Assembly: GCA_035221665.1 (NCBI GenBank)
Contig: JAVHYY010000297.1
Location: 124,001-188,000 of the forward strand
Length of the DNA: 64,000 nucleotides
Source of the DNA: Okamejei kenojei
Taxonomy: Eukaryota
Direction: 5' to 3'
Below are positions 379 through 62,588 of the stretch, one piece after another. The position numbers were made by a program, and so were the translations under genes. Position 1 is the first letter of the stretch, and every line of letters begins with the position of its first letter. The notes beneath the pieces were generated by a model. That model saw nothing but the letters and a program-made list of their open reading frames with translations. It was not told the origin of the DNA and ran no database searches.

Positions 379-383
379 TCATC
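379..383 (-). CDS. Copy A candidate terminal coding segment (G|GA TGA), followed by putative 3' UTR
   Basis: cag|GATGA conserved in A, B and C. The acceptor is weak. An upstream ttcttaatag acceptor would give GPCKPNVLINHTG* in A. Confidence 0.3.
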
Positions 384-1016
384 CTGTATGGTTAATTAAG
401 ACATTCGGTTTGCATGGGCCTATTAAGAATGGTGTGTCTCAATGATGGCAGCGGGAGGGGTGGCGGGATTTCCGACCATATAGCCTCCTCGGGAGGTTCC
501 AATTGCCGGACCGGTACGTTTTCCACATTACTGGAGAATATCTAACACGTTTCAAATTAACTTAATTTTGGGCTGTGCCATGTCCGCAACTGGTAGAGTT
601 GCTGCACTCTCGCCACCGCAAAAGCGGCTTCTAGTCTGACCGTGTTTATTTCTGTTAATTGGTTTAGTGTATGGTCACTTTTACCGAGGTACTGTAAAAA
701 TATGTTTTTGGTCGCTTGATATCCAGTAAGCAAAACGACTCTACATTATTACGATCCATAATGTACAGGTACAGAATTGGAGAATATCATGTTTAAACCG
801 CGTACGTTTAATCCGGTTCTCCCGGTTTCCTCCCTCATCTAAACGCCGTGTGAGTGTGTCGAGTAGCTGGTCTCTACAAAGTGCCTACAATGTGTAGGGA
901 GTCGACGTGATGGTGCGATAACATAGAAATATTATGACTAGGCGATCTATGTTCAGCGTTGGATCGTTGGGCCATGGGTGATGATTTTCATGACAACAAT
1001 TAGGCTCTTTCACACT

Positions 1017-1262
1017 GCGGCACAGTGACGATGCGGGTAGAGTTGCTGCCTCACTGCACCAAAGACCCGGGTTCGATCCTTACCTCGAGTGCTGCCTTGT
1101 GGGGTTTGTACGCTCTCCCTGTGTCTTCGTCTGCTTCTTCGTGGAGTTCCCGTTTCCTCTTGCATTCCAAAGACAGCAGCTTTGATAGGCCACCGTAAAT
1201 TAGCCCTTATGTGTCGAAAATGGATGGAGCTAACGTAAGTTGCATAAGACGCGGGTGATGCC
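1017..1262 (+). mobile_element. tRNA-derived SINE (HE1-like); paralogs at ~31763-32010 and ~61771-62020
   Basis: gcggcacagtg..gtagagttgctgcctcac..gacccgggttcgatcct. Confidence 0.8.
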
Positions 1263-2095
1263 GCATTTAGAGTATTGTGTTTAGTAACTGGCACCAAGTT
1301 ATTTGAAAGATGTCGTCAAGCTGGAAAGGGTACATAGAAGATTTACGATGATATTGCCAGAATCAGATTATCTGATCTCCAGGGATGGGTTGACAAGACT
1401 GGGATTCTATTCCCTGACAAGCATGGTGGATGAGGGGTGATATTATAGAGGTCTATAAAAACATGAGAGGAATAGATCGGGTAGAAGGGACAGAAGTTTA
1501 GGGTAACATGAGGGGGAACTTCTTTACTGAGAGAGTGTTAGCTGTGTGGAATGAGCTCCCAGTGGAAGTGTGGAGGCAGGTTCGATTTTATCATTGAAAA
1601 ATAATTAGATAACTATATGGACGGGAAAGGAGTGGAGGGTTATGGTCTGAGTGCAGGTAGATGGGACTAGGTGAGAATAAGTGGTCGGCTAATAAGAAGG
1701 GCCGAGATGGCCTGTTTCCGTGCTGTAATTGTTATATAGTTATATGCTTATATAGATGCACAGAGTGTCCTCTCCAGAGTAGTTGAATCGAGAACCAGAG
1801 GACATAGATTTAAGTTGAAGGGGAAAATATTTAATAAGGATCTGAGGGGGGAACGTTTTCACACAAATGGTGGTCGGAGTCTTTATTTTTGTAGTTCACT
1901 TTTATTGTGATAATTACTTTATTGGTTATTTGCTTAATTGACATTATCCATTCGCGTAGAGCTTGTCGATCTGTTATGCCGCAGCTAAAAAGATTTTCGT
2001 TGTTCCTTTGACCGTGCATACTACAGTTAAATCCTTTTGATTCTTGATTCATAATATTGATTTATGTGGCGCTTTTCATTGAATTCATGTCTCAC

Positions 2096-2101
2096 CTTCT
2101 C
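2096..2101 (-). CDS. Copy A putative 6-nt microexon (GAGAAG)
   Basis: ctctttctgtttcgattccag|GAGAAG|gtgagac: a polypyrimidine tract, AG, 6 nt and a strong donor. Frame-preserving and identical in all three copies. Confidence 0.55.
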
Positions 2102-4189
2102 CTGGAATCGAAACAGAAAGAGTAGTACTACAGCTGACAAATTCTGGATTTAATGTGTTATGCTGGGATGGAAAATTCCACCTGCAATTGATGTCATAAA
2201 CTATTGACAATGAAAGTTCGAAAGCCGCGAGTTTGTGAACAGGGCACGGTGCTCGAGACAGTCTTGGCAACAGCGCTGCCTGATTGTGTGCCTTCTGAAT
2301 ATTTACCAATGTCAGCTGCAGGTCAATGGGCTGCACTCTTGATCTCTTATTCGCTTTGCACTCTCCCTGACGCTTTCTCTCTCTATTCCAGTCTATTTAT
2401 TTCAATATGTTGTATACTGATATCTCTCTCTATCTCTTTCCCTCTCGCCCTCCCTCTCCCCCTCACTCTCTTCCTCCCTCTCCCCTCCCTTGCTTTCTCT
2501 CTCTCTCTCTTTCTCTTGCTCCCTTTCTCCCTCCCATTCTGTCGCCGTCTCCATCCTTTCCGTCCTCCTTCCCTCTCTCTCCCCCCATTCACATCCCCCT
2601 CGCTCATTCTCTCTCGCTCTTTCCTCCCTGTTCCTCCCCCCCTCTCATAAAGAAAACCATGACTTCATGCCTCAGACCAAAAATCCCCATTGATACTTGT
2701 CCTCCACGAATCCCAAGTTGTTCTTTCCACATTCCAATCAACTTTCCCGCAGGTCCCGCAACTCAACCCCACACACATCAGGAGCGATTAACCGTATCCA
2801 ATTAACCCAACACAGTACATCGTTGGATGTTTTGAACCACCCTGGTTATGACGTCAATGCAGTTTCTGGGTGAGTAGGGATAATCTGAAAGGTAATGTTG
2901 AGCAGCAGGATCTCTTCTTTGTAGCTACAGACCTAGACAGGAAAAGTTAGGAGGTCACGTAGAGTGAACATAGTGAATTAAGAAACAAGGGGAAGAACAG
3001 GGTCTCTTGAGTGTAGTCTCAGAATTGCTGTGTCACCTTCTAGTGAGCGTGGAGTGAAAATATTAGGAGAACGAGTGTGTGGCTGAGGAGCAGGTGCGGG
3101 AGGGAGAGTTCAGGTTCTTCGAGCATTGGGGTCCCGTTTTGGGTAAAAGTGACCAGTAGAACTGGAATGCGTTGCACCTGAAAAAGGGGGAAACTACGTT
3201 TGTAAGAAGTTTGTAAGACACGATTTCCCTTGCACTAAGCCATTTCTAAAGTTTATTCAGTCTGTACTTTGCAGTCTTGATACATTAGTTGATTTGAGAA
3301 TCTTCTCCTGCTACTTGCGTCTGGTTAAGCTGCCATATAATGTTGTAGTTTGACTTTTCTTACCATCATTTACAGAGGGAAAACAATGGGTACTATATCA
3401 CCCTCTAGTACCTCGTTTGTTGCTCACGAATGGAGACACGGTTGTTGTGAAAAATTGAAGCAGGATCTTGATGGAATGGCCAGGTGGTCTCAGGGATGTT
3501 TTACGGATATGAGGTGAATGTGGTAACTGAGAGGTGTTGCATTTTCGGGATGTCTAACATGGCAGGGCCGACACTGTGCATGGTAGGGCGGTGGGGTGTG
3601 TTGTGGAGCAGACGGATCTAAGCGTGCATGTGCATAGTACCTTGAAGGTTGAGTCGCAGGTAGAAAAGGTGGGCGAAAGGGCACCCGGGCGTGGCGCCGA
3701 CAGACAAGTAGCCGAAGCAAATAAATCGAAGCCAAGGAACGGAATGGAAACGAGGCCGAAACGTACATAAACCGAAAGAGTCCGAAGGCCAACCGCCTAC
3801 TAACCGAAACGGCGGGACGCCTACATCCCAAGGAACCAAAAAGCAAATACTAAATGGCCACTCTGTCGAAACGCCACCTACCCGAGAGGCGGCGTCGCCT
3901 ACAAGCCAAAGGGCCGACTGCCGCTCAACAGAAACGTCCAATAACGGACCAAACGTTGCCGGGGTCGGGACATGTCAGCGATTGGTCCAGACCCCCGCGT
4001 CCATCACATCACCGTGAAGGCATGAACATTGTTCCAAACCTGCGCTCCCCCCGGCCCGCAGTCCACGGAGGGTGGCCGTGGGAGAGGGGGGGCTGTCCCG
4101 AGCAATGCACACCTTTGGTCGCTTTTAACTTGGTGATTGGGTCCAGATTGCCCAGTCACCTATGACTTGTGTGGGAAAATGAACCCCAC

Positions 4190-5484: not shown

Positions 5485-5793
5485 CGTCTCCCGTCCTATC
5501 GACTATCTTGACCTCCAGTTCCGCCCGCCACTGAGGGTTGGATGCCGAGAGGTTCACAGTTTCCATCGTCAGGTTTGCCCCGTGGACGATCAGTATGATG
5601 AACACCCGCGAACCGACACGAAGGCAATCTGCCCGGACGTCCTCGGCCGTGTCCGTCATTGTGATCGTCCGGTTCAGGAATCCCCATGTGACGTTGACGG
5701 GGGAGTTGGATTGCACAATGCCGCGGCAGTTCACGTTGGTGCGATACTTCGAGCATCTGGCCCAGGACATACCGGCCGCTTCATCTGTAAGGT
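5485..5793 (-). CDS. Copy A Ig domain 4 exon (resembles MAG membrane-proximal domain; degenerate Cys pattern)
   Basis: Acceptor ttttctccccccaag| (alternative in-frame acceptor at 5784), donor GAC G|GTAAGA. Reads SWARCSKYRTNVNCRGIVQSNSPVNVTW..SASNP. Homologous open exon in copy B. Confidence 0.8.
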
Positions 5794-9882: not shown

Positions 9883-10143
9883 GCTGACTGACGACTCGCA
9901 CGGGAGCGGAACGTAAGCTCCCAAGAACGTTTCTCGCCGTGCAGCTGTAGGATGTAGTTGCCCTTTCCGACTCAAGGTGAATGGTGATATATGGACGTTC
10001 CCATCTTAGATCAATCTCAACGCCACGGGTGATCTTGAACCAGGAGAAACTAGTGGCACTGGGCTGGGCGTCACTGGAACAACGCAGAGAAATCGTGTTG
10101 GCTTCTCTGAAGATCCACTCGACCACCGTGATCTGGGGGGAAT
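9883..10143 (-). CDS. Copy A Ig domain 3 (C2/I-set) exon
   Basis: tgtttccaag|AT TCC...CAG C|GTGAGT, 261 nt. The junction rebuilds LNVN-YSP. Motifs LRCSSDAQPS..FSWFK..YSCTARNVLG resemble CD22/MAG/sialoadhesin domains. Confidence 0.92.
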
Positions 10144-20086: not shown

Positions 20087-20377
20087 AATTTACATTCAGG
20101 GTGACGGAGTTTTCCAGTCTGTGACTCGTATCAAAGTAGTCAACCGTACAACGAACAGTTTGCCCGTCATGAGACGCGGAAGGAATAAATATCAAGACAG
20201 TTGAAATTTCTCCGCTCATTTCCTCCCCAAGCGTATGGCTGATGGAATTTGGCAGCTCACTCCAGGTGAGAGATGCGCGTTGAACGGGGCAGGTGTAGAG
20301 GGCTTTGCAGAGGATATTCACCGGGATCCCTTCGATGAGAATTTCCGGGATTAAAATCTCCGGTTTATCAGGTGTAT
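20087..20377 (-). CDS. Copy A Ig domain 2 (Siglec C2-set) exon
   Basis: ctccag|AT ACA CCT...AAT T|GTAAGT, 291 nt. Reads DKPEILIP..CKALYTCP..LTW..HDGQTVRCTV..VTLNV, with the extra Cys typical of Siglec domain 2. Confidence 0.92.
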
Positions 20378-21414: not shown

Positions 21415-21771
21415 CCAGAACGTGCAGTTGGACGGGGGTTATGAAGGTGTAAGTATCAAAGCCGTCCACTTCCACGTAGAAGTAGTACACATCAGAGTCT
21501 TCGGATCTGAGGTGGTTGATCTGCAGCGAGCAGTCTTTCTCTCCCAGGTTGCCAACGATTTTAGCCCTCCCCTTGAACCCGGCCATTCCGTAGTTAGGAT
21601 CTCTGGAGTAATACACCGTGTACTTCCAGTAGTACCAATACTTGAACCACGCTCCGTGGATAGCGGTGTAATGATGCGAGGGGAAGTCGAACGTACAAGG
21701 TATCACCACGCAAGAATTCCTGATGGCACGATGGGACCGAGCCCGCATGGTCCATTCACCCGACTGCACGC
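21415..21771 (-). CDS. Copy A Siglec-type V-set Ig domain exon
   Basis: ccattccag|...CTG G|GTGAG, 357 nt, phase 1-1. Motifs SCVVIPCTF, GAWFK, FKGRAKIVGNLGEKDCSLQI and DSDVYYFYVE match the Siglec V-set (B-E intrasheet Cys pair plus the interdomain Cys). Confidence 0.92.
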
Positions 21772-24675: not shown

Positions 24676-24715
24676 CATGGAGAAGTAACAGGGGGAAGCA
24701 ATATTGCCAGATCAT
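24676..24715 (-). CDS. Copy A signal-peptide exon, coding part MIWQYCFPLLLLH-G (whole exon 24676-24757)
   Basis: Acceptor ctctttttttttacag| at 24758, ATG at 24715, phase-1 donor G|GTAAAA. Joins in frame to G-VQS of the V exon to give a hydrophobic leader. Confidence 0.85.
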
Positions 24716-24792
24716 TGTGTTTTCTTGAACATATCGTCCGTTTACGGTTATCAGGATCTGTAAAAAAAAGAGCAATCAAATAATGTCACTAT

Positions 24793-26389: not shown

Positions 26390-26530
26390 CATACACACAC
26401 ATATACCTACAAACACACACACGCTTACAATCACCCACCCACAAACAAACGCACACGCTTCGAGACACACACACACACACACACACACACTTACAAACAT
26501 ACAAACACACACGTACAAACAAACACAGAC
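26390..26530. repeat. (AC)n-rich microsatellite; duplicate at ~56430-56565 with a shorter pure tract
   Basis: Pure (AC)n core differs in length between copies. Confidence 0.9.
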
Positions 26531-27214: not shown

Positions 27215-27410
27215 TTTCAAAGCTGTCGGGGTTGCAGCTTGCACTGAGCTTCTGTGAATCTGCGGGGTCGTCTCTGTGATTCTGCAGGTTTGGTCACTTC
27301 GGTTCGAAAACCGTCGCAACTGTAAATTGCGGATAAAGCCGCGTTAAAACAGGCCACGGGGCCCGCACGTTGCACTGATCTCTCCTCAGAACCGATGTTG
27401 ATTTTGAAAT
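27215..27410 (-). other. Siglec-like gene copy A, putative non-coding exon 1 (5' boundary approximate)
   Basis: Strong donor GAAA|GTAAGT at 27215/27214. Lies just downstream of a CATAAA/TGACGTGG/CCAAT/CCGGAA motif cluster. I saw no ATG in it, and the next exon has an acceptor upstream of its ATG, so an upstream exon is required. Confidence 0.6.
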
Positions 27411-27434
27411 GTCCAAATGAGCTGGATCGAACGG

Positions 27435-27540
27435 TTTATGTAACAGCAGTGGGACGACCACTAGCCACGTCAGAGAGGCGCCGATTGGACGTCCTGTTAG
27501 AGGGTGTTTCCGGGTCCATATTTCGAACAGTTTCCGGAAT
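27435..27540 (-). promoter_or_regulatory. Putative promoter of copy A
   Basis: Minus-strand motifs: ETS-like CCGGAA (27508-27513 and within TTCCGGAA at 27532-27539), CCAAT (27484-27488), TGACGTGG (27465-27472) and TATA-like CATAAA (27435-27440). Locally CpG-rich and conserved in copy B. Confidence 0.5.
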
Positions 27541-31164: not shown

Positions 31165-32574
31165 CTGCATTGTTAATGATGACATCCGGCTTGCCGGGCC
31201 TATTAAGAACTGTGTGTGTCCATCTCGGGGAGGGGGGAGAAATTTCCGACCATCTGGCCTCTTCGGGAGGTTGGATGTACAGGACCAGCAGGTTTTCCAC
31301 ATTAATGGAGAATCATTTCAATGTAACTTAACTTGGGGTTGCGCCGTGGCTCAGCTGCTAGAGTTGCTTCTCTCTCACCGCTACAAAAGCGGGTTCGATC
31401 CTGACCGTGTTTAAATCAGTTCAGCTTAGTTTAGTGTTTTGTCACGTTCGCCGAAGTACTATTAAAAAAAACTTTTTGTTTGGTCGCTTGATAACCAGTG
31501 AGAATAACGACTGTACATTATTACGATCATGCAGTCCATAACGTACATGTACATAATAGAAAATATAATGCTTAAATCGCGTACGTTTAATCCGGGTCCC
31601 CGGTTTCCTACCGCATCCAAAAGTCGCGTGAGTTTGTCGAGAAGCTGGTCTTTACAAATTGCCTCCAATGTGCGGGGAGTATGACGAGGCGATCTATGTT
31701 CAGCGTTGGCTCGTTGGGCCAAAGGGCTAGTTTCCAAGATAACCATAAGGCTCTTTCACACAGCGGCACAGTGGCGAGGCGGGTAGAGTTGCTGCCTCAC
31801 AGCGCCAAAGACCTGGCTTTTATCTTTACCTCGATTGATGTCTGTGTGGAGTTTGCACGATCTCCCTGTGCCCTCGTGTGATTATTCGTGGCGTTCCCGT
31901 ACCCTCTCGCATTCCAAATACTGCAGCTTTGAGAGGCCATGGTAAATTCCCCTTCATGTGTAGAAAATTGATAGAGCTAACGTAAGTTGCATAAGGCGTT
32001 GGCGAGACGGCATTTAGAGGATTATGTTCCGTTCTTGGCACCAAGTTATTGGAATGATGTTGTCAAGCTCGAAAGGGTACAGCGATGATTTACGAGGATA
32101 TTGCCAGAACCAGAGGGTCTGAGCTGCAGGGATGGGTTGAGAAGACTGGGATTCCATTCCCTGGCGCTCATTGAGCATGAGCGGTAATCTTATAGAGGTC
32201 TATAAAATCATGAGAGGAATAGATCGGGTAGATGCACATAGTCGTTTGTCCAGAGTAGTTGAATCGAGAACCAGAGGAAATAGGTTTAAGTCGAAGGGGA
32301 AAATATTTAATAGAAATCTGAGGGGGAACGTTTTCACACAAATGGTGGTCAGAGTCTTTGGTTGCAATCATTTTATTTATTTCATTTGTATTGTGATAAT
32401 TACATTATTGGTTGTTAGCTTAATTGATATCATCTATTAGCATATAGCTTGCACATCTGTTATGCTGCTGCAAAATCGACTTTCATTATTCCATTGACTG
32501 TACATACGACAGTTAAATCCATTTGATTCTTGATTCCTCATATCGGTGACGCTTTTCAATCAATCGTATCTCAC

Positions 32575-32580
32575 CTTCTC
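32575..32580 (-). CDS. Copy B putative 6-nt microexon (GAGAAG)
   Basis: ttttctctttctgtttcgattccag|GAGAAG|gtgagat. Confidence 0.55.
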
Positions 32581-34079
32581 CTGGAATCGAAACAGAAAGA
32601 GAAAAGCTACTGTTGATAAATTCGGGATTTAATGTGTTGTGCTTGGATGGAAAATTCCACTTGCAATTAATGTCGTAAGCTATTGACACGGAAAGGTCGA
32701 ACGCTACGAGTTTGGGAACAGGACACGGTGCTCGAGACAGTCTTGGCAACGGCGCTGACTGATTGCGTGCCTTCTGAATATTTACCAATGCCCGCTGCAC
32801 GTCAATGGGTTGCACTCTTGCTCTCTTGTTCGCTTGCCAATATCCCTGACGCGTTCTCGCTCAATCCCAATCTATTTATTTCTACATTTTGTTTACTGAC
32901 ATCTCGCTGTCTCTCTCCCCCTCCCTCTCACCCTCCCTCTCTCCCCCCCTCTTTATCCCTGTCCCCCTCCCTTGCTCTCTCCCTATCTCTCTCCCTCCCT
33001 CCCGTTTAGAGTACAAACTATGCGAGGAATAGACCGGTGTACAAAATCAGGACAGTAAATGTTCGGGTAGAGGCACAGAGTCTCTTACTTCAAGTGCTTG
33101 AATCCAGTACCAGAGGACAGAGGTTTAAGGTGAAGGGGGGGGGGGAGATGTAATAGTAACCCGAGTAACTTTCTCACACAACGGGTTGTGTGTGGGTGTA
33201 TGGGACGAGCTGCCGGAGGATGTTGTTGAGGCAGGTATATAGTATTTGGAACATTTAGACAAATGCATACTTTGGACAGGTTTAAAGGGATACGCGTCAA
33301 ATGCAGGTAGCTGTGCATAGTATATGACGCCATGACTCTCAGACCGTCATCACTATCGGCAGTACTGAAGGATCTTTGCGCTGACAATCCACTTATTTGA
33401 ATCTCCTCCACCTTGCAGTAACTCCTGAAGTTGCTAGGACAATCGCATCGTTATTAAAGTTATTTAACGTTGTAGAATCAAATAAAACGAGTGCGGGTCC
33501 TCGCTCTCTCCCGCCGTCCCTACCCCTGCCCCCTCCACCTACAGATAATCACCAGTATAAAGAATCATCCACGGGTCTCTGGTGCTGGCAGTAACTNNNN
33601 NNNNNNNNNNNNNNNNNNNNNNNNNNNNNNNNNNNNNNNNNNNNNNNNNNNNNNNNNNNNNNNNNNNNNNNNNNNNNNNNNNNNNNNNNNNNNNNNNNNN
33701 NNNNNNNNNNNNNNNNNNNNNNNNNNNNNNNNNNNNNNNNNNNNNNNNNNNNNNNNNNNNNNNNNNNNNNNNNNNNNNNNNNNNNNNNNNNNNNNNNNNG
33801 CCTCTCCCCCCCCCCCCCCCCCCCCACATATAGAAAATCATGTGTTCAGGACTCAGACAACAATCCCCCGTTGATACATGTCCACCACTAATTCCAGGTT
33901 ATTCTTTCCACATTCCCATCCCAGCAGGTCCGGCAACTCAACCCCACACACACCAGGAGCGATTAACAGTATCCAATTAACCCAACAACCTAGTATGTCG
34001 TAGGATGTTTGTACCTGAAAAGAGGGAGGATAGGAAGATTGTAAGACGCCTCTTCCCTCGCACTAAGCCATTTCTAATG

Positions 34080-40809: not shown

Positions 40810-41130
40810 CGTCGCCCATCTCATTGTCAATCCGAACCTCCAGCTCCGCCCGCAAAGGGACCAGCCATAGTGGGTTGGATGCCGAGAAGTTCACAGTCTC
40901 CACCATTTGGTTTACCCCGCTGACTACCAGTGTGATGAACACCAGCGAACCGACGCGAAGGCAATCTGTCCGGATGTCCCCGGCCGTGTCCGTCATCGTG
41001 ATCGTCCGGTTCAGGAATCCCCATGTGACGTTGACGGCTGAGATGGATTGCACAACGCAGCGGCAGGTCACGTTGGTGGGATACATCGCGCATCGCGCCC
41101 AGGACAGAACGACCGCTTTATCTTCAATGT
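40810..41130 (-). CDS. Copy B Ig domain 4 exon
   Basis: Acceptor ttttttgcccgcgag| (or aag| at 41121), donor GAC G|GTAAGA. Reads SWARCAMYPTNVTCRCVVQS..VNVTW, with a 4-aa insertion (LVPL) relative to A. Confidence 0.8.
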
Positions 41131-42586: not shown

Positions 42587-42844
42587 TTTGACTGGGGACT
42601 CGCACGGGCGCGGAACGTGAGCTCCCAAGAGCGTTTGTCGCCGTGCAGCTGTAGGATGTAGGATTTTCCGACTCAAGGTGAACGGTGATATTTTGATTTT
42701 CCCGCCTTAGATCAGTCTCAGCGTCACGGGTGACCTTGAACCAGGAGAAACTAGTGACACTGGGGTTCGCGTCACTGGAACAATGCAGGGAAATCGTCTT
42801 GGCTTCTTTGAATATCCACTCGACCACCGTGTTGTGGGGGGCAT
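42587..42844 (-). CDS. Copy B Ig domain 3 exon
   Basis: ttccaag|AT GCC CCC...CAA A|GTGAGT, 258 nt. Reads YAP..LHCSSDANPS..WFK..YSCTATNALG. Confidence 0.92.
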
Positions 42845-47545: not shown

Positions 47546-47589
47546 GGATTCGATGTAGCTGTTAGTGTGATAAGTGCACATGTTATAAG

Positions 47590-48165: not shown

Positions 48166-48665
48166 TCCCGAGTGAATCCGTTGAGGTGCCCCAGCTAGAG
48201 TTTTCGCCCACAAATTGAAGGATATAATTACGAAGGAAAATATGCAGAACGGATTCATTCGTGATGTCAATATCGTGTAAAGTGTTGGATTATGGAGGGA
48301 GCCTGGGCATACTTGGCCATTTTGTCTTCAGAAAGCAGGACGCTGACGGGTGATTTTATCTTTCCTGTACAAGCGCACGCATAAATTGAACCTCTGGAAG
48401 AAGATTCTAAAGCTGGAGGATCGCAGATTGTATCTGAAACTCTTTGCTAGGGGAAGCTATGAAGTACAATTATAACTTTCCAAAGACGGATTTGCAGATA
48501 TATGGATGGCGAGTATTTCGATGGATAGGGCCCAAATGCAGGCAGATGCGACGCCCAAAGAAAGCCAAACTAGATCCCATGGAAAAGGTGGAAGGAATGT
48601 TCCGTTTCCCTGCTGTACGGATCGGTGAATCATTGATTATAATAATTTATTAAAAGTATACTTAC

Positions 48666-48956
48666 ATGTTACATTCAGGGTAACGGAGTTTGCCAGTCTG
48701 TGACTCGTATCAAAGTAGTCAACCGTACAGTGAACCGTTTGCCCGTGATGAGCGGCGGAAGGAGTAAAAGTCAAGACAGAGGATATTTCTCCGCTCGTTT
48801 TCTTGGCAATCTCAATGATGGTGGAATCTGGCAGCTGACTCCAGGTGAGAGATGGGCGTTCATCGGGACAGGTGTAGAGGGCTTTGCAGATGATGTTCAC
48901 CGGGGTCCCTTCGGTGAGAATTTCCGGGATTAAAATCTCGGGTTTATCAGGTACAT
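48666..48956 (-). CDS. Copy B Ig domain 2 exon
   Basis: ctccag|AT GTA CCT...ACA T|GTAAGT, 291 nt. Motifs CKALYTCP and HHGQTVHCTV. Confidence 0.92.
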
Positions 48957-49665
48957 CTGGAGATTGGAAAGATTTAGTGAAACAACATGTAGGGAGGGGC
49001 TGGGACTGGTGATGCGAGTTATATTTTAGACTCAAACTGTTGTTAGTCCAGAACGCACTGCCTTGGAGGGTGCAAAGAACAAACTGATGAAGGAACACCA
49101 CCTGCTGAGCAGCATTTGTGGAGGGAAAGCGATGGTATGGAAGGCACAATCTCAACCAAAATTATCCACCATCAATTCGACTCCATTGATGTTGCTCGCT
49201 GAGTCAATCCAGATATTTATTGTTCTTTTGCTCCACAATCCACCATCTGTAGCGTCTTATCGGCACAAGAGAGTGGGGCATGCTATGATTCTACGATAAT
49301 TTAAAAATCCACCTGTCCATCCACCTATCCACCCATCTGTCCACCACCTGACCACCATCCGTGCACCATCTGACCACCACCTCTCCACCCATCCATCCCC
49401 CATCCGTCTATCTATCCATCTACCGAAACATCTACCCACCCATCCATCCATCGATCTATCCATCTACCTATTCTCTATATGTACTAATCCCACTTGTTAA
49501 ATGTGTCGCGGAGGACAAATCGCCATTAGTCCAGTATTCCAGAGTGTAAGGTCCTAGGAATCACCGCAGTTCCACCGATGAATTTCACCTGGGGGCTTTC
49601 ACAGTTATTTTACCTCCCTGTCTATTCGGCCAATTAACCTACAAATATGTACGTCTGAGTAGTGC

Positions 49666-51252: not shown

Positions 51253-51627
51253 GAAAACCGTGGCACCCCGAGAAATCCCACATACTCCCAGGGAGAACGT
51301 GGAAAGATCACGTAGAAAACACTGGTAGACAAGATGGAACCCCCGTCTTTGGCGCTGTGGGGCAGCATCTCTACCACTCGCTAGAACCACGCTTGTTAGA
51401 CACCAAGCCGTTACTAGCACCACCCTCTCCTTCAACATTTCGCCCTCTGTCCTATCGCTGTCCCAATATGCATTCCCATTGCTGTGCAATTCCCCAAGCT
51501 GCAAACCTCCTGCGCTCGCTCTAAAGCGCAGGACTGAGAAAGAACTTAGAAAAGAAATTTCAAAACGGAGCTAAACCAACTTTGAAGTACGTGTGCACAG
51601 CGGACGCAAACTTTGAAGGGGCCTCAC

Positions 51628-51984
51628 CCAGAACGTGCAGTTGGACGGGGGTTATGAAGGTGTGCGAATCAAAGCCGTCCACTTCCACGTAGAAGTAGTA
51701 CACATCAGAGTCTTCGGATCTGAGGTGATTGATCTGCAGCGAGCAATCTTTCTCTCCCAGGTTGCCAACGATTTTAGCCCTCCCCTTGAACCCGGCCATT
51801 CCGTAGTTGGGATCTCTGGAGTAACATACCGTGTACTTCCAGTAGTACCAATACTTGAACCACGCTCCGTGGATAGCGGTGTAATGATGCGAGGGGAAGT
51901 CGAACGTACAAGGTATCACAACGCAAGAATTCCTGATGGCACGATGGGACCGAGCCCGCATGGTCCATTCACCCGACTGCACGC
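51628..51984 (-). CDS. Copy B Siglec-type V-set exon
   Basis: 357 nt, phase 1-1. Three aa differences from copy A (TVYYS to TVCYS; DTYTF to DSHTF). Confidence 0.92.
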
Positions 51985-54716: not shown

Positions 54717-54756
54717 CATGGAGAAGTAACAGGGGGAAGCAATATTGCCAGATCAT
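54717..54756 (-). CDS. Copy B signal-peptide exon, coding part (whole exon 54717-54798)
   Basis: Identical leader MIWQYCFPLLLLH-G; splice sites intact. Confidence 0.85.
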
Positions 54757-57242
54757 TGTGTTTTCTTGAACATATCGTCCGTTTACGGTTATCAGGATCT
54801 GTAAAAAAAAGAGCAATCAAATAATGTCACTATGGGCGGCACGGTGGCACAGCGGACAGAGTTGCTGCCTTACAGTGTGGAGAGACTCGGGTTCCATCCT
54901 GCCTCCGGGGACTGTCTGTCCGGATTTTGTACGTTCTCCACATCACCTGCGTGGGTTTACGGTTGGTGCTGCGCTTTCCTCCCACACACCAAAGACGTTG
55001 TGGTTTGTAGGTCATTTGGCATCGATAACATATTGATAACATTATAAATTGTATCTAGTGTGTGTAGGGTTATGTTCGTGTGCAGAAACGTTGGTCGGCG
55101 CGGACTCCGCAGGCCGAAGAGCATATTTCCCCGCTATATCTATAAATTAAGCTAAACTAATTCTTTAGAAATATATTCTCGCTTCGCGGTTTTGCGCCTC
55201 AAAGATCAGAACCACACATATTAATAACATAATTGATATACCAACAGATCGCAGGAGATCCTGGAGAAAATCTACGCAGTTCACTGCGAGAACGTACACA
55301 TTCGTACAGACAGCATCCGTAGTCGGGAGCGGACATAGTTAAAGCAGCAAATCCACGGCTGCGCCAGCGTTCCACCTTGCCACCGTATAGTTATATGAAG
55401 AGGAAAGATGCATGGAAGTTAAGGTTGTGAGACAGGGTAATAGAAGAGCATAGAAAATAAAATTGCACGTGACCCATGATGTTTGTACCGAACACGATGC
55501 TGTGTTAAAATATTCTCGCCTGCCTATACGGGGCACACTCGTCCATATCCTGCATGTCCGAGTGCCTAATACTACTATAGATCTGCTTCCAATACTGCCA
55601 TTGGCAGCGCGTTCCAGACGCCCCCATCCTTTTCGTAAGTTGGGACTAGATGTATGAGTCAATGATTCTGTTGGAATCTGTATTTTCTGCAGATAATATC
55701 AGTGGACCACTATGGGCTTCACCTTTCCTTGATAATCGTTACATTTTGCAAATGTTTCATTCAAATGATCTCTATCTCTATATCACCTGCTGTATCTCGT
55801 TTCTCTTTCCCCTGATTCTCAGTCTGAAGAAGTCCCGACACGAAATGTCACAAATTCATTTGCCCCAAAGATGCTGCCTTACTCGCTCAGTTCCCCTTCC
55901 TTTCGTGTCTATCTTCCAGCTCAGTTAGGTAACCTGTTCGGCACGAACCAGAGGGACTGAATTGTCTGTTCCAGTTATGTATAGCTGGACGATTTTAATC
56001 GTCGTTCTGGGTCTGTAGTTCAGCAAAGTTCCCGAATCAGATAAAAAAAAGGATTTTGGCTCAAAAAGAAACATATTTGAATTGTGATAGTGGCTGTCAA
56101 CACACTCATTCCCCTAATTAAATTGCTCAATCGTCCAGGGCCAGAACCGTTAGTTACCCTACCCATCATGAACTTCACCACCTACATGACTCCTGGACAT
56201 TTAGCAGTGATGAATTTGCCTTTGAGTTCTGCTGTGGGATTTGTAGCCAAATTCGTTTGGGTCTAAAACGGCATTGCCGCATCTGCGAGAGGCCACGTTG
56301 CAACACTTTTACCAGAAACAAACAGAAGTTTACATTTCCCAATGCATTTCAGAGAGTCAAATGGACATTTTATTTTGGCAAGGAGGCGATAATGCAGAGC
56401 GTACATACAGACTTGCACCAACACACTCGCATACACACACATATACCTACAAACACACACACGCTTACAATCACCCACCCACAAACAAACGCACACGCTT
56501 CGAGACACACACACACACACACTTACAAACATACAAACACACACGTACAAACAAACACAGACATACTCGATGAGTCGGCGAGCAGCCGCCAAGATCAGAA
56601 GGGGCGGGGGGGCACCAAGATTGAAGGGGGGACCCGGCGGGGAAGCGGGGGGGGGGAAGGGTTGAGCCTGAAACCACATGCCGCGGCAGGCAGAAGATAG
56701 GACTGCTCGGTAATCATTTGTAACTTCGTCAGCGCCAGAAAAGTGGCTATATTTGTGAACTGATGACGTGATGTCTGACATACGATTTTACCGGGTTGTG
56801 TGCAAAACAAAGCATTTCGCTGTAGCTAGGCACTTGTGAACAATAAATCATAATTGATCATCTGATCATTGAATACACACATGCACACAAGTACAAATCC
56901 ACCCCAGGCATGCACACACACCCCACCCCGCGCTCACACGTGCACCCAATACTGCATATAGAGAACACACAGAACACAGCATATACAGAACACACACGCG
57001 TTCAATAAACGCACACATACACAGACGCCCTCGCAAATAAAACGCATGCACACCTTCCATAAAGACACACTCGAAGGCGGGCGCGCATTCACACAGACCC
57101 ACACAGTAGCAGCGCAGGTAACTAATCAAATGTAACCCCCCATTCACACAAACAGACCACAACCCCCCCCCCCCCCCCCCATTATTTTATCATATGAATA
57201 GTGAGCAATTTCGCAAACTCGAGAGAAGATAGTCCTACTTAC

Positions 57243-57440
57243 TTTCAAAGCTGTCGGGGTTGCAGCTTGCACTGAGCTTCTGTGAATCTGCGGGGTCGTC
57301 TCTGTGATTCTGCAGGTTTGGTCACTTCGGTTCGAAAACCGTCGCACCTGTAAATTGCGGATAAAGCCCCGTTAAAGCAGGCCACGGGGCCCGGACGTTG
57401 CACTGATCTCTCCTCAGAACCGATGTTGATTTTGAAATGT
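57243..57440 (-). other. Copy B putative non-coding exon 1 (5' boundary approximate)
   Basis: Near-identical to 27215-27410 (offset +30028); donor GAAA|GTAAGT. Confidence 0.6.
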
Positions 57441-57462
57441 CCAAATGAGCTGGATCGAACGG

Positions 57463-57568
57463 TTTATGTAACAGCAGTGGGACGACCACTAGCCACGTCA
57501 GAGAGGCGGCGATTGGACGTCCTGTTAGAGGGTGTTTCCGGGTCCATATTTCGAACAGTTTCCGGAAT
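57463..57568 (-). promoter_or_regulatory. Putative promoter of copy B
   Basis: Same CCGGAA, CCAAT, TGACGTGG and CATAAA cluster as copy A. Confidence 0.5.
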
Positions 57569-57709
57569 GATTGAACATCTGTGAAACCGTAGACATTTTG
57601 AATAAGTTATTATTTTCGAGATAGACGACATAAACCACCACCATTTGCAAATCACAATGGAAGTGCAAATACAATCTTCCGTAAGAATCGCTTTTCAAAT
57701 TCAGTGAGC

Positions 57710-60232
57710 TAGAAACATTAAAACATAGAAAATAGGTGCAGGGGGTGGCTATTCTGCCCTTCTTGCCAGCACCACCATTCATTGCGATCATGGCTGATCG
57801 TCCCCATTGAGTAACACGTGCCTGCCTTCTCCCCATATCCCTTGGCTCCACTAGCCCCTAGAGCTCTATCTAACTCTGTCTTAAATCCATCCAGTGAGTT
57901 GGTCTCCACTGCCCTCTGTGGCAGGGAATTCCACAAATTCACAACTCTCTGGGTGAAAACTTTGTTTTTACCTCAGTTTTAAATTGTCTCCCCTTTATTC
58001 TAAGACTGTGGCCCCTGGTTCTGGACTCGCACAACATTGGGAACATTTTTCCTGCATCTAGCTTGTCCAGCCCATTTATAATTTTATTTGTTTCTATGAG
58101 ATCCCCATCATCCTTTTACACTCTAGTGAATACAAGCCTAGTCTTTTCAATCTTTCCTCATATGGCAGTCCCTCCATCCCATGATTCAATTTCGTGAAGC
58201 TACGCTGCACTACCTCAATCACAAGGATGTCCTTCCTCAAATTAGGAGACCAAAACTCAACGCAATACTCGAGATGTGGTCTTACCAGAGCCCTATACAC
58301 CTGAAGAAGAGCCTCTCTACTCCTATACTGAAATCCTCTGTTATGAAGGCCAACATTCCATTAGCTTTCTCAACTGCCTGCTGTACCTGCACGCCAATTT
58401 TCAGAGACCCATGTACAAGGACATCCAGTTCTCCCTGTACCTCCCCCTTACCTAACCTAACCTAATTGAGATAATAATCTCCCCCCTTGTTTTTTGCCAT
58501 CAAAGTGGATAACCTCACATTTATCTATATTATATTGCATCTGTCACGCATCTGCCCACTCACCCAACCTGCCCAGGTCAACCTGCAACCATCTAACATC
58601 CTCTTCACGGTTCACAGTGTCACCCAGCGTTGTGTCTTCCGGAAAATTGCTAGTGGTGCTCCCAATTCCCTCTTCCAAATCATTAATATATATGTCAAAC
58701 AGTTGCGGCCGCAAAACCGTGCCTTGCCGCACTCCACTCGCCGTTGCCTGCCATTCTGAAAATGACCTGTTCACTCCTACTTTTTGCTTTGACCCCCAAT
58801 ACCATTGGGACTAATTTTAGTCACCAGTCTCCCGTGCGTGACGTTATCAAACGCTTTCCGAAAGTCTAGATACACTACATCCACAGGTTGCCATTCATCC
58901 ATTTTACTTTTCACATCCTCACAAAATTTCAGAAGATTAGTCAAGCATGATTTTCCTTTCATAAATCCATGCGGACTTGCACTAATCCTTTTACTGCTAT
59001 CCAAATACCCCCATTATTACCACTTTAATAATTGACCCCAGCATCTTTCCCACCACCAAAGTGAGGCTAACTGGGATGTAATTCCCCGTTTTCTCTCTCG
59101 CTCCTCTCTACAAAAGTGGGATGACATTGGCTATCGTTCAATCCGCAGGAACTGATCCTGAATCTATTGAACATTAGAAAATATCACCAATGCGTCCACT
59201 ATCTCTAGAGCCACCTCCCTGAGGACCCTGGGATGCAGTCCATCATGCCCCGGGGATTTATCATCCTTCAGTACCATTAGCCTACCCAATACTATTTCTC
59301 GCCTAATGAAAAATTATTTCAGTTCTTCGACCCCCTTAGATCCTCAGTCCTCCAGTACGTCTGGGAGATTGTTTGTGTCTTCCTTAATGAAGACAGACTC
59401 GAAGTACCTGTCCAACTCTTCTGCCATTTCCTTTTTCCCCATAATAATTCACCAGAGTCTGCCTTCAAGGGACTCACATTTGACGCTGCTACTCTCTTTC
59501 CCTTAACATATCTAAATAAGCGTTTACAGTCTTTTTTTTTATATTCCTGGCCAGCTTCCCTTCGTACTTCACCTTTTCGGCCCGTATTGCCCATTTTGTT
59601 TCCTTCTGTTGCCCTATGAAAGTTTCTCAGTCCTCTGGCCTCGGCTACTCTTTGCTATGTTAAACATATGTTTTTGTTGGTTTATAATCAATCACTAACT
59701 TATCTTGTCAGCCAGGGTTGCCTCCTACTCACCTTAGAATATGTCCTCCTTTTTGGAATGAAGTGTTCCTGCGTCTTCCGGGTTATGCAAATACATTCCT
59801 GCCATTGTTGTTCCACCGTAATTCCTGCTAGTATCCCTTTCCAGTCTACCTTGGCCAGCTCTTCGCTCATGCCTTCATAATCCTCATTGTTCAGCTGCAT
59901 CACTGCCACTTCCGATGTAACCTTCGCCTTCTCGAATCTATTCTAAGACTGTGGACCCTGGTTCTGGACTCGCCCAACATTGGGAACATTTTTCCTGCAT
60001 CTAGTTTGTCCAGTCCTTTTATAATTGTGTCTGATTCTTTAAGACCCCCCTCATCCTTTAAAACTCAATGAATACAAGCCCAGTCTCTTCAATCTTTCCT
60101 CATATGACAGTCGCGCCATCCCAGGGATCAATCTCGTGAACCTATGCTGCACTACCTCAATCACAAGGATGTCCTTCCTCAAATTAGGAGACCAACGTGT
60201 ACACAATATTATAGATGTGGTCTTACCAGAGC
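57710..60232 (-). mobile_element. CR1 LINE (duplicate of 27682-30200)
   Basis: Near-identical sequence. Confidence 0.93.
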
Positions 60233-62582
60233 CACATCGACAAAATCGGCAAAATAGATAGTTCAAACGAAATTTCCATATGACAAACCAAAATTATTTA
60301 CCACTGATCGGCCAACAGCTACAACAGTACGCAAACAGCTGCAGAACATCGATATTTGGGAAAGGCAAGAGACGGCAAATGCTGTTGTCTAGAGAAAAGG
60401 GTAAAATGCTGGAGGAACTCAGCGGATCGGGTAGAAAGCGTGGATGATAATGGACAGACGACATTTTTGGGCGGGGCCCTTTTTCAGCCTGGTCCATTTT
60501 TCTCCTCATCTTCTTCCCAGCCCACTGAGTTCCTCCAGCAGTTTCCCTTTTACTCGAGATCCCAGCATCTGCAGTTTCTTGCCTATGCCAATTAGGGATA
60601 TTCGGCTCATTATATCTCTAATTTACCAGCGTATTAATCGCTGTCCTTCGTGAAAAACAGGCGCTATACTTTCAATCCCGCATGTGTACTATTTTGGCCG
60701 CTTGCAAATGCGTGCTCAAGACGGTTCCAGTTCGCCCAGAACCATATTTTAGTTATTTTCGGAAGGAGATGAGGAGAGGTTTCCTTAGTGATGGGAATTT
60801 AGTTATGGGAAGGTGAATCTGTGGAACTGTTTGCCACAGAAAGCTGAAGAGGCCAAGTCAGTTGATACTGTTAAGGCAGAGGGAAGAGATTTTTAATTAG
60901 TACAGTGTCAGAGTCATGGGGCGAAGGCAGGAGAATGGAGCTGAGAGGAAGAGGTAGATCAGCCATGATTGAATGGCGGAGACTTGATGGGCCGAATGGC
61001 CTAATTCTATTCCTATCACATCACCTTATGGATTATGAACTACTTTGGCCTTTTCTAAAAGCATGTCTGCACTGACAAATATCTCAGTATTGCCTCCCCA
61101 GCGCTGAGTCGGTTTCAAAATCTGATCACTGTCCGTACAAGTCTCTCGCCACATGTCACGTGTTGCTTCATCCTGCATTGTTAATGATGACATCCGGCTT
61201 GCCGGGCCTATTAAGAACTGTGTGTGTCCATCTCGGGGAGGGGGGAGAAATTTCCGACCATCTGGCCTCTTCGGGAGGTTGGATGTACAGGACCAGCAGG
61301 TTTTCCACATTAATGGAGAATCATTTCAATGTAACTTAACTTGGGGTTGCGCCGTGGCTCAGCTGCTAGAGTTGCTTCTCTCTCACCGCTACAAAAGCGG
61401 GTTCGATCCTGACCGTGTTTAAATCAGTTCAGCTTAGTTTAGTGTTTTGTCACGTTCGCCGAAGTACTATTAAAAAAAACTTTTTGTTTGGTCGCTTGAT
61501 AACCAGTGAGAACAACGACTGTACATTATTACGATCATGCAGTCCATAACGTACATGTACATAATAGAAAATATAATGCTTAAATCGCGTACGTTTAATC
61601 CGGGTTCCCGGTTTCCTACCGCATCCAAAAGCCGCGTGAGTTTGTCGAGAAGCTGGACTTTACAAATTGCCTCCAATGTGCGGGTAGTATGACGAGGCGA
61701 TCTATGTTCAGCGTTGGCTCGTTGGGCCAAAGGGCTAGTTTCCAAGAGAACCATAAGGCTCTTTCACATAGCGGCACAGTGGCGAGGCGGGTAGAGTTGC
61801 TGCCTCACAGCGCCAAAGACCTGGCTTTTATCTTTACCTCGATTGATGTCTGTGTGGAGTTTGCACGATCTCCTTGTGCCCTCGTGTGATTATTCGTGGC
61901 GTTCCCGTACCCTCTCGCATTCCAAATACTGTAGCTTTGAGAGGCCATGGTAAATTCCCCTTCATGTGTAGAAAATTGATAGAGCTAACGTAAGTTGCAT
62001 AAGGCGTTGGCGAGACGGCATTTAGAGGATTATGTTCCATTCTTGGCACCAAGTTATTGGAATGATGTTGTCAAGCTCGAAAGGGTACAGCGATGATTTA
62101 CGAGGATATTGCCAGAACCAGAGGGTCTGAGCTGCAGGGATGGGTTGAGAAGACTGGGATTCCATTCCCTGGCGCTCATGGTACATGAGGGGTAATCTTA
62201 TAGAGGTCTATAAAATCATGAGAGGAATAGATCGGGTAGATGCACATAGTCATTTGTCCAGAGTAGGTGAATCGAGAACCAGAGGAAATAGGTTTAAGTC
62301 GAAGGGGAAAATATTTAATAGAAATCTGAGGGAGAACGTTTTCACACAAATGGTGGTCAGAGTCTTTGGTTGCAATCATTTTATTTATTTCATTTGTATT
62401 GTGATAATTACATTATTGGTTGTTTGCTTAATTGATATCATCTATTAGCGTATAGCTTGCACATCTGTTATGCTTCTGCAAAATCGACTTTCATTATTCC
62501 ATTGACTGTACATACGACAGTTAAATCCATGTGATTCTTGATTCCTCATATCGGTGACGCTTTTCAATCAATCGTATCTCAC

Positions 62583-62588
62583 CTTCTC
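62583..62588 (-). CDS. Copy C putative 6-nt microexon; upstream exons of copy C lie beyond the window
   Basis: Same acceptor-GAGAAG-donor context. Region is near-identical to copy B at offset ~+30008. Confidence 0.55.

What the first reader, a model, noticed from the sequence alone, without database searches (positions are those of the whole stretch)
379..62588. Tandem array of apparently secreted, four-Ig Siglec/MAG-like genes with no transmembrane or ITIM exon
Seen: two complete intact copies (leader-V-C2-C2-Ig4, ~422 and ~425 aa) and the 3' end of a third, at ~30 kb spacing. After Ig4, each continuation I could build stops without a hydrophobic helix: intron read-through gives GDGKN*, microexon plus cag|GATGA gives GDGEG*, and the other acceptors give GPCKPNVLINHTG*, a 39-aa hydrophilic tail, or AVCVLL*. 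The interval from B's Ig4 exon to A's promoter (40810 down to 27540) is almost all TE relics. Known: Siglecs (SIGLEC1, CD22, MAG, SIGLEC15, CD33-related) are type I membrane proteins. Inference: an expanding family of soluble Siglec-fold proteins in a cartilaginous fish, perhaps decoys, opsonins or mucosal/secretory proteins.
Basis: partly seen in the sequence, partly recalled or inferred. Interest (0 to 1): 0.82.

Follow-up and report, generated by a model that had tools for sequence, protein, structure and literature searches.

The report
Skate MAG-like Siglec genes without membrane anchor
A skate genome carries a tandem array of immune-receptor-like (Siglec/MAG-type) genes that have no membrane-anchor exon and should therefore encode secreted proteins; their expression could not be shown, and databases already predict similar anchor-less relatives in two other skates.

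Summary
On the minus strand lie two complete genes (A, B) with leader, Siglec-type V, two C2 and a fourth Ig-like exon, plus the terminal exon of a third gene (C), in ~30-kb units. No transmembrane (TM) exon is detectable downstream.

New here:
- Orthologues in Rhinoraja, rays and sharks keep Ig4 followed by a TM helix and a tail.
- RefSeq models of Leucoraja erinacea and Amblyraja radiata paralogues are TM-less. Their alternative short tails map onto the window's downstream region.
It gives GEGET* in A and a 22-aa hydrophilic tail in B and C, with AATAAA about 180-200 nt on.
- A and B differ as much in exons as in introns (dN/dS 0.8-1.4) but have no stop or frameshift (joint chance about 1e-4), so coding capacity is maintained.
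- Ig4 folds as an Ig domain closest to MAG.

Weak points:
- Gene A has a G>T at the donor of its 5' non-coding exon.
- Inclusion of Ig4 in the mRNA is not shown.

The scan had noted the next copy's V exon beyond this window. No follow-up report on this family was returned.

The parts
27318..27495 (-). Gene A, putative 5' non-coding exon 1. Its donor reads CAG|TT in A but CAG|GT in B.
   Evidence: It is homologous to aa 77-143 of the Rhinoraja model P0016, with stops in the window's frame. The A/B alignment shows G>T at donor position +1 in A.
24676..24757 (-). Gene A leader exon (ATG at 24715; MIWQYCFPLLLLH, phase-1 donor)
   Evidence: tblastn with the leaders of P0016, P0022 and P0051; sequence read.
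21415..21771 (-). Gene A V-set exon (Siglec-type; Tyr at the canonical Arg position)
   Evidence: Pfam V-set / Ig_CD22. Best PDB sequence matches are MAG at 2e-14 and sialoadhesin at 2e-13; YYFYVEVDG aligns to MAG YYFRGDLGG.
20087..20377 (-). Gene A C2-set exon 1
   Evidence: Sequence read. It is 75-76% identical to the same domain of P0051 and P0016.
9883..10143 (-). Gene A C2-set exon 2
   Evidence: Pfam Ig_2/Ig_3; exon boundaries.
5485..5793 (-). Gene A fourth Ig-like exon (membrane-proximal type, MAG-D5-like)
   Evidence: It is 67% identical to Ig4 of Rhinoraja P0016. The fold model has pLDDT 76 and its best PDB hit is MAG 5lfu/5lf5.
3110..3177 (-). Gene A terminal exon T1. After Ig4 the tail is GATHSSSTGHFYPKRDPNARRT*.
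   Evidence: It is 82.5% identical to the tail of A. radiata isoform X1 (P0054), with a stop in the window. Coordinates.
2877..2932 (-). Gene A terminal exon T2, homologue of the RWLQ.GRRSPAAQHYLSD tail. In A there is a stop at the third codon.
   Evidence: tblastn with the P0051 and P0022 tails gives 12/14 identical residues, E 5e-5. Coordinates.
1882..2101 (-). Gene A terminal exon T3 (tail GEGET*, stop ends at 2085) with 3' UTR and three AATAAA signals (1923, 1906, 1887).
   Evidence: It is homologous to the EGEIRIE* and ESEIRRE* tails of P0052 and P0050. A/B/C alignment; coordinates.
54717..54798 (-). Gene B leader exon (ATG at 54756)
51628..51984 (-). Gene B V-set exon
48666..48956 (-). 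Gene B C2-set exon 1
42587..42844 (-). Gene B C2-set exon 2
40810..41130 (-). Gene B fourth Ig-like exon
33977..34014 (-). Gene B remnant of T1. The acceptor is kept and the exon body is deleted; after Ig4 the tail is GTNILRHTRLLG*.
   Evidence: B lacks A's 2833-3205. Sequence read.
32376..32580 (-). Gene B terminal exon T3 (tail GEGEIRLIEKRHRYEESRIKWI*, stop ends at 32513; AATAAA at 32381)
62384..62588 (-). Gene C terminal exon T3 (tail ...ESRITWI*, stop ends at 62521; AATAAA at 62389). It is the only exon of copy C in the window.

Best explanation
The window holds part of a tandem array (unit about 30 kb, at least three copies) of MAG/CD22-like Siglec-family genes of a skate. The ancestral gene, still seen in Rhinoraja, rays and sharks, encodes signal peptide, V, C2, C2, a membrane-proximal Ig domain, a TM helix and a cytoplasmic tail.

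In the lineage of this window the TM and cytoplasmic exons are gone. Transcripts should end in one of a few short terminal exons downstream of Ig4: T1, T2 or T3 in gene A, and a T1 remnant or T3 in genes B and C. Each adds 2-22 hydrophilic residues and then a poly(A) signal.

The predicted product is a secreted glycoprotein of about 420 aa with four Ig domains. It would have three Ig domains if Ig4 is skipped, as in the annotated paralogues. The copies diverge fast at the protein level but are kept open, as in diversifying immune gene families.

The most likely role is a soluble binder that competes for, or tags, the ligand of this receptor family. It would not bind through the canonical sialic-acid Arg, which is Tyr here.

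Shown: the gene anatomy, absence of a TM exon in fully read copy A, homology of the terminal exons to RefSeq TM-less models, and maintenance of the ORFs.

Inferred: transcription of these copies, inclusion of Ig4, secretion and function.
For: - Exon anatomy and phases.
- No TM-grade hydrophobic window in A's gapless 5.4 kb downstream of Ig4 (maximum 1.82, against 2.07-2.96 for real TM helices of relatives).
- No tblastn trace of the TM or tail exons of P0004, P0006, P0008, P0015, P0016 or P0017.
- Relatives with Ig4 followed by a TM helix: P0016, P0015, P0017, P0018, P0021, P0004.
- TM-less RefSeq models in L. erinacea and A. radiata have tails that map to window 3175-3056, 2918-2877 and the exon starting at 2101.
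- The exact 325-aa isoform ending in the T3-type tail is also recorded from a Logan run assembly. Because it is a multi-exon product, I infer that this record is a spliced transcript.
- T3 is conserved in A, B and C, with AATAAA downstream.
- Exons C2-1, C2-2 and Ig4 differ by 14.6% between A and B, against 14.1% for non-coding sequence. They carry no frameshifting indel (5.6 expected, P = 0.0035) and no stop (simulated P = 0.026).
- Per-exon trees place A and B with the skates.
- Pristis XP_051864872 is a predicted 444-aa four-Ig TM-less relative.
Against: - There is no RNA evidence for these copies.
- No protein from these genes is in the 5.8-billion-protein collection. The source genome's annotation either skipped them or is not held there.
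- dN/dS of about 1 is also what a pseudogene shows.
- A has a G>T at the donor of its 5' non-coding exon and the longest branches.
- The annotated skate paralogues do not include Ig4.
- B and C have an unread 203-221-base gap in the Ig4-to-T3 intron, next to B-specific sequence, so a small exon there cannot be strictly excluded for B and C.
Confidence: 0.6

Rival explanations
1. The copies are unexpressed, 3'-truncated duplicates (young pseudogenes). Their open frames are left over from recent duplication and gene conversion.
For: - dN/dS is 0.8-1.4, and exon divergence equals intron divergence.
- No annotated protein and no RNA holder were found.
- A's exon-1 donor is mutated.
- T1 and T2 carry early stops in A, and B has lost the T1/T2 segment.
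- Window copies have long terminal branches compared with Rhinoraja.
Against: - At about 14% divergence, 5.6 frameshifting indels and 3.5 stops are expected in the three divergent exons. None is seen (joint chance about 1e-4).
- All splice sites of the coding exons are intact in both copies.
- Cys and Trp core residues are kept.
- A further intact Ig4 exon (P0059) exists in a run assembly.
- Paralogues with the same terminal exons are modelled as coding genes by RefSeq.
Confidence: 0.25
2. The genes are ordinary type I membrane receptors. Their TM exon was missed because it lies in an N run, beyond the window, or is too diverged to recognise.
For: - The Rhinoraja orthologue and all ray and shark orthologues examined, except the Pristis model, have a TM helix after Ig4.
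- B and C have an unread gap in the Ig4-to-T3 intron.
Against: - Copy A is read without gaps from Ig4 to T3 and its poly(A) signals. It has no hydrophobic window above 1.82 and no similarity to any relative's TM exon.
- In B the whole interval down to gene A's first exon holds no hydrophobic segment that resembles a relative's TM exon or is also open in A. The hits are in TE, SINE-like or low-complexity sequence, or are out of phase.
- The gap in B abuts a poly-G / GA-rich tract.
- The annotated paralogues end in these same short exons.
Confidence: 0.07
3. The genes are expressed and TM-less, but Ig4 is skipped. This would match the annotated Leucoraja and Amblyraja models, giving three-Ig secreted proteins, with Ig4 as a decaying relic exon.
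For: - All seven proteins of the P0022 cluster lack Ig4: six RefSeq models that end after C2-2 and one V-exon fragment from a run assembly.
- The Ig4 acceptors are AAG in A and GAG in B, which are weak types.
- Ig4 evolves about 4-5 times faster in the window copies than in Rhinoraja.
- For Ig4 alone the evidence of constraint is modest (P about 0.035).
Against: - Ig4 is open in A, B and P0059, with only an in-frame 12-base indel and good GTAAG donors.
- C2-2 also uses an AAG acceptor and is included in the RefSeq models.
- The Rhinoraja and Pristis models include Ig4.
Confidence: 0.25

Closest known systems
RefSeq-predicted 'myelin-associated glycoprotein-like' proteins of Leucoraja erinacea (XP_055486389.1, XP_055486390.1) and Amblyraja radiata (XP_032872248-50, XP_032872515)
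   Same: - Same leader (MIWQYCFPLLLL...).
- V, C2 and C2 are 72-83% identical.
- Tyr at the canonical Arg position.
- No TM helix.
- The same alternative terminal exons (T1, T2, T3).
   Different: - They are paralogues, not the same genes (about 80% identity, separate clade).
- Their models have three Ig domains and no Ig4.
- The window copies keep an open Ig4 exon and are not in the protein collection.
Rhinoraja longicauda 'sialic acid-binding Ig-like lectin 10' XP_078286300.1
   Same: - V-C2-C2-Ig4 architecture.
- 67-81% identity per exon-domain, with Ig4 at 67-69% over the tblastn span (72% over A's 102 aligned columns).
- The same 5' non-coding exon.
   Different: It has a TM helix (FIYVMVVFLLICFVVAGLM) and a 39-aa cytoplasmic tail after Ig4. 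The window has none.
Pristis pectinata 'sialoadhesin-like' XP_051864872.1 (444 aa)
   Same: A predicted four-Ig protein of the same family without a TM helix.
   Different: It is only 41-69% identical and its C-terminal tail is unrelated. It is a single gene model with unverified support.
Mammalian MAG (Siglec-4), sialoadhesin and CD22
   Same: - The V domain matches MAG and sialoadhesin best (E 2e-14 and 2e-13), with the Siglec Cys pattern.
- The Ig4 model matches the MAG ectodomain best.
   Different: - The canonical Arg is Tyr.
- There are four rather than 5-17 Ig domains.
- There is no TM helix or cytoplasmic tail.
Soluble paralogues of Ig-superfamily receptors such as LAIR-2 (antagonist of LAIR-1), and soluble Siglec isoforms such as soluble Siglec-5
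   Same: An ectodomain-only protein related to a membrane receptor. LAIR-2 competes with LAIR-1 for ligand (PMC6182393, citing Lebbink 2008). Soluble Siglec-5 binds PSGL-1 (PMC8198044, citing Pepin 2016).
   Different: - Mammalian soluble Siglecs are splice or shed forms of membrane genes. Here the gene itself lacks the anchor exon and is tandemly multiplied.
- No membrane-bound partner of this family was found among annotated Leucoraja or Amblyraja proteins.

Membership tests
Siglec family (I-type lectins) | N-terminal V-set domain with the Siglec cysteine pattern (B-E intrasheet pair plus one extra Cys, no F-strand Cys) and best similarity to Siglec V domains | tested here: met
   Pfam V-set and Ig_CD22. 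The top PDB hits are MAG, sialoadhesin, Siglec-5, CD33 and Siglec-8. SCVVIPC...KDCSL aligns to MAG TCVSIPC...RNCTL.
Siglec family (I-type lectins) | Canonical Arg on the F strand that binds the sialic-acid carboxylate (PMC12953582 abstract) | tested here: not met
   YYFYVEVDG aligns to MAG YYFRGDLGG, so Tyr replaces Arg. The consensus of cartilaginous-fish relatives also has Tyr.
Siglec family (I-type lectins) | One or more C2-set Ig domains after the V domain | tested here: met
   Ig_2/Ig_3 hits, and an Ig-fold model for the fourth domain.
Siglec family (I-type lectins) | Type I membrane protein with a TM helix and a cytoplasmic ITIM or ITIM-like motif, or a charged TM residue | tested here: not met
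   No TM-grade segment and no TM or tail homology downstream of Ig4.
Siglec family (I-type lectins) | Binding of sialylated glycans | not testable with these tools
   This needs a glycan array with recombinant protein.
Secreted decoy paralogues of Ig receptors (LAIR-2 type) | Signal peptide plus an ectodomain homologous to a membrane receptor, with no TM helix and no GPI signal | tested here: met
   Leader exon, orthologues with a TM helix, and short hydrophilic tails. This is shown at the sequence level only.
Secreted decoy paralogues of Ig receptors (LAIR-2 type) | A membrane-bound partner in the same organism that shares the ligand | tested here: inconclusive
   No Ig4-TM protein from Leucoraja or Amblyraja was found in searches limited to 244-777 aa and 359-1143 aa. 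The window's own genome could not be searched.
Secreted decoy paralogues of Ig receptors (LAIR-2 type) | The protein is found in body fluids and competes for ligand | not testable with these tools
   This needs proteomics and binding assays.

The most novel reading that the evidence does not exclude
Skates have turned a MAG/CD22-like Siglec receptor into a dedicated family of secreted, fast-diversifying four-Ig proteins, multiplied in tandem. These would act as humoral recognition or decoy molecules with a binding site that does not use the canonical Arg. That would be a soluble arm of the Siglec system not known in other vertebrates.
Probability: 0.3. Interest if true: 0.7.

Novelty: new variant of a known kind. 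Interest (0 to 1): 0.45.

Why it matters
All Siglec genes described in the papers I could search encode membrane receptors, and their soluble forms are by-products of splicing or shedding. A gene family of the Siglec fold that has dropped the anchor at the genomic level, multiplied in tandem and kept diverging would be a natural case of a receptor converted into a humoral factor. It would parallel LAIR-2 or the PSGs, but in the oldest jawed-vertebrate lineage.

The whole cartilaginous-fish clade also lacks the canonical Arg. The family therefore offers a test of what a MAG-like V domain binds without it.

On the practical side, the window shows genes that the protein collections do not hold. 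It also corrects the terminal-exon structure.

Tried and rejected
1. A hydropathy-based search for the leader exon gave only low-complexity hits. The leader was found by homology instead.

2. RefSeq paralogue tails EGEIRIE* and ESEIRRE* read through that GT.

3. T1 as a frameshifted relic of the TM exon. Its third frame reads LSLPHLLLSHTLVLLIFSL (Kyte-Doolittle 1.82) after TQNGTP, resembling Rhinoraja TEQGTP followed by its TM helix. However, 689 of 2000 shuffles of the Rhinoraja tail score as well, so this is not supported.

4. MWKEQLGIRGGQV at 2732-2694 resembles the shark MWKIGLGSVGGAV (E 1.4). It lies in what looks like SINE-derived sequence (my reading of the letters, not tested) that is shared with B at 33817-34010 and is not open in A. 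Rejected.

5. Hydrophobic ORF pieces in B-specific sequence (35549, 38142, 39277, 33996) are too short, out of phase, in sequence that looks SINE-derived (39277), or not open in A (33996). None resembles a relative's TM exon.

The Rhinoraja, Leucoraja and P0059 loci could therefore not be fetched to compare TM-exon DNA.

8. Literature searches for Siglecs in cartilaginous fish or elasmobranchs found no study of this family.

Inside one script the in-frame parts of three exons were strung together, only to count simulated stop codons.

Full report
**What is there.** All features lie on the minus strand.
- Gene A: leader exon 24757-24676 (ATG at 24715, MIWQYCFPLLLLH, phase-1 donor), V exon 21771-21415, C2 exon 20377-20087, second C2 exon 10143-9883, and a fourth Ig-like exon 5793-5485.
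- Gene B: the same five exons, with leader ATG at 54756, then 51984-51628, 48956-48666, 42844-42587 and 41130-40810.
- All junctions are phase 1 with AG/GT sites, and all exons are open.
- Pfam recognises the V-set / CD22-type first domain in both copies, Ig_2/Ig_3 for C2-2 in both copies, and only weak Ig matches for B's C2-1. It finds nothing for A's C2-1 or for the fourth exon.
- A model of the fourth exon, built on an alignment of 12 relatives, is a beta-sandwich (pLDDT 76). Its best PDB matches are the MAG ectodomain (5lfu, 5lf5) and then I-set Ig domains. A profile search also points weakly to MAG residues 402-461.
- The 'four-Ig' description is therefore right.

**Array structure.** A self-comparison shows a tandem unit of about 30 kb.
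- Window 1-21035 matches 30780-49665 at 82-86%.
- Window 21040-33596 matches 51253-63609 at 96-98%.
- The third copy (C) contributes only its 3' region, from 60814 on.
I did not check this.

**The N runs.**
- 22366-23176 and 52590-53127 lie in intron 1 of A and B, inside a CAGATCGATCAA-type minisatellite.
- 33597-33799 and 63610-63830 lie in the last intron of B and C, beside a poly-G tract.
- No exon spans a gap, and no reading frame depends on one.
- The annotated paralogues join the leader directly to V, so no exon is expected in the intron-1 gaps.

**Relatives.** A profile of the two Ig4 exons, searched against 1.84 billion representative proteins, found 8 proteins at E <= 0.001. Six of them are Siglec/CD22/MAG-like proteins of fishes; the other two are long repetitive proteins with no visible Ig-domain content and no source name looked up. 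A word search with the best hit then listed the family across sharks, rays and skates.
- With a TM helix after the Ig4-type domain: Rhinoraja longicauda XP_078286300.1 (V-C2-C2-Ig4, then FIYVMVVFLLICFVVAGLM and a 39-aa tail), Mobula, Hemitrygon, Pristiophorus, Scyliorhinus and Cetorhinus. In most of these the tail carries Tyr motifs such as xxYANL.
- Without a TM helix: Pristis XP_051864872.1 (444 aa) is a four-Ig model.
- The closest annotated skate proteins are all TM-less: Leucoraja erinacea XP_055486389/90 and Amblyraja radiata XP_032872248-50 and XP_032872515. They are V-C2-C2 proteins of 322-365 aa with four alternative short tails.
- Per-exon trees put the window's copies inside the skate clade, separate from the Leucoraja/Amblyraja clade. 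Rhinoraja falls at or near the base. The window copies, A above all, have long terminal branches.
- I therefore take the genome to be a skate's and these genes to be unannotated paralogues.

**The 3' end.** The tails of the RefSeq models map onto gene A's downstream sequence.
- T1: ATHSSSTGHYCHKRYPNAPRTRNLPP... matches 3175-3056 (82.5% identity). This is an exon with a strong acceptor at 3178/3177 and a stop in the window. After Ig4 it gives GATHSSSTGHFYPKRDPNARRT*.
- T2: RWLQ.GRRSPAAQHYLSD matches 2918-2877. In A it is stopped at the third codon.
- T3: EGEIRIE* and ESEIRRE* correspond to the exon that starts at 2101 in A, 32580 in B and 62588 in C.
The models read through the following GT.
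- After Ig4, T3 gives GEGET* in A and a 22-residue hydrophilic tail in B and C. AATAAA follows about 180-200 nt further on in all three copies.
- B has lost the segment that holds the body of T1 and all of T2 (A 2833-3205). It keeps the T1 acceptor at 34015/34014, which would give GTNILRHTRLLG*.
- The exact 325-aa Leucoraja isoform with the T3-type tail is also on record from a Logan run assembly. A multi-exon product can only be contiguous in a transcript, so I take this as indirect evidence that T3 is used in vivo. This is an inference.

**No anchor.**
- In gene A the 5.4 kb from Ig4 to T3 and beyond is read without gaps. The most hydrophobic 19-residue windows on the gene strand score 1.82 and 1.59, against 2.07-2.96 for the TM helices of six relatives.
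- tblastn with the TM and tail segments of six relatives gives only chance-level hits.
- In B, the hydrophobic segments on the gene strand within the Ig4-to-T3 intron lie in B-specific, SINE-like or out-of-phase sequence. Those further down, past T3 and past gene A's first exon, lie in TE and simple-repeat sequence. None resembles a relative's TM exon.
- The only unread part is the 203-base gap. It adjoins B-specific sequence and a poly-G / GA-rich tract, so a hidden exon cannot be strictly excluded for B and C. It can be excluded for A.
- None of the tails ends in a hydrophobic run, so a GPI signal is not expected.

**Are the genes alive?**
- Between A and B the V exon lies in the recently homogenised block (97.5% identity, dN/dS 0.13).
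- The other three exons differ by 14.6%, the same as aligned non-coding sequence (14.1%), with dN/dS of 0.78, 1.43 and 0.79.
- Non-coding sequence carries 6.6 frameshifting indels per kb, so 5.6 are expected in the 858 aligned exon bases. None is seen (Poisson P = 0.0035). The two exon indels are 3 and 12 bases long.
- Random substitution at the observed level leaves the three exons free of stops in 2.6% of simulations.
- Coding capacity has thus been preserved while the protein sequence changed fast. This pattern fits diversifying immune gene families better than dead genes.
- For Ig4 alone the evidence is modest (about 0.035).
- A further open Ig4 exon of this type (P0059, unspliced context) exists in a run assembly.
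- Against gene A: the donor of its 5' non-coding exon, which is homologous to part of the Rhinoraja model, is CAG|TT where B has CAG|GT. Its branches are also the longest.
- B looks the most intact copy.

**What could not be done.**
- No RNA run was listed as holding the Ig4 region.

**Reading.** The best explanation is a skate-lineage loss of the TM and cytoplasmic exons from a MAG/CD22-like receptor gene, followed by tandem multiplication.
- The products would be secreted four-Ig glycoproteins, or three-Ig proteins if Ig4 is skipped as in the annotated paralogues.
- By analogy with LAIR-2, which antagonises LAIR-1 by competing for ligand (PMC6182393), and with soluble Siglec-5 (PMC8198044), a soluble competitor or tagging role is the most likely. 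This is inference.
- The V domain is Siglec-type by sequence and cysteine pattern, and closest to MAG and sialoadhesin. The canonical Arg is Tyr, here and in the whole cartilaginous-fish clade. Sialic-acid binding should not be assumed.

**Novelty.**
- The family and its TM-less isoforms are already predicted in RefSeq for two skates.
- The literature I could search has no study of Siglecs in cartilaginous fish.
- These four-Ig copies and their array are not in the protein collections.
- I rate it a new variant of a known kind, of moderate interest. The rating is limited mainly by the lack of expression evidence.

Noticed in passing
window 27316-27317 versus 57344-57345: The donor of the putative 5' non-coding exon 1 is CAG|GTGCGA in gene B but CAG|TTGCGA in gene A. 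This is a G>T change at +1 inside the 98%-identical block, and it is a possible splice defect of A.
   Followed up: partly
window 21040-33596 versus 51253-63609: A 12.5-kb block is 96-98% identical between units, while the rest of the unit is 82-86% identical. The block covers the V exon, leader, promoter, intergenic DNA and the next gene's terminal exon T3. This points to recent gene conversion or re-duplication.
   Followed up: partly
window 33977-34034 versus 2833-3205: Gene B has lost a 373-base segment that holds the body of terminal exon T1 and all of T2. The T1 acceptor is kept, which creates a new 12-residue tail.
   Followed up: yes
window 22366-23260 and 52590-53270: The intron-1 N runs sit in a minisatellite (unit about CAGATCGATCAA). 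The 8-base islands between N runs (AGATCGAT, ACAGATCT) are pieces of it.
   Followed up: partly
P0016 (Rhinoraja XP_078286300.1) residues 1-150: The N-terminal 150 residues of this RefSeq model look like a mis-predicted extension. The first part reads like a receptor fragment. Residues 77-143 are homologous to the window's non-coding exon 1, which has stops in the window. The true start is probably MIRQCCFLLLFLQ.
   Followed up: partly
window 5486-5791 and 40811-41128 (Ig4): The canonical F-strand Cys of Ig4 is present in the sawfish, ray and shark orthologues examined (VNCSVANP / VSCSVANP). It is replaced in every skate copy seen (VNLSASNP, VNFSASNP, VNFSVSNP, VNVSASNP). Copy A has also lost the second Cys of the CxC motif (NVNCRG).
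   Followed up: no
window 12011-14376 (+), 46063-47543 (-), 27682-29899, 57710-59930, 5867-8083: There are several LINE-type reverse-transcriptase relics of one family in introns and between genes (Pfam RVT_1, E down to 9e-25).
   Followed up: partly
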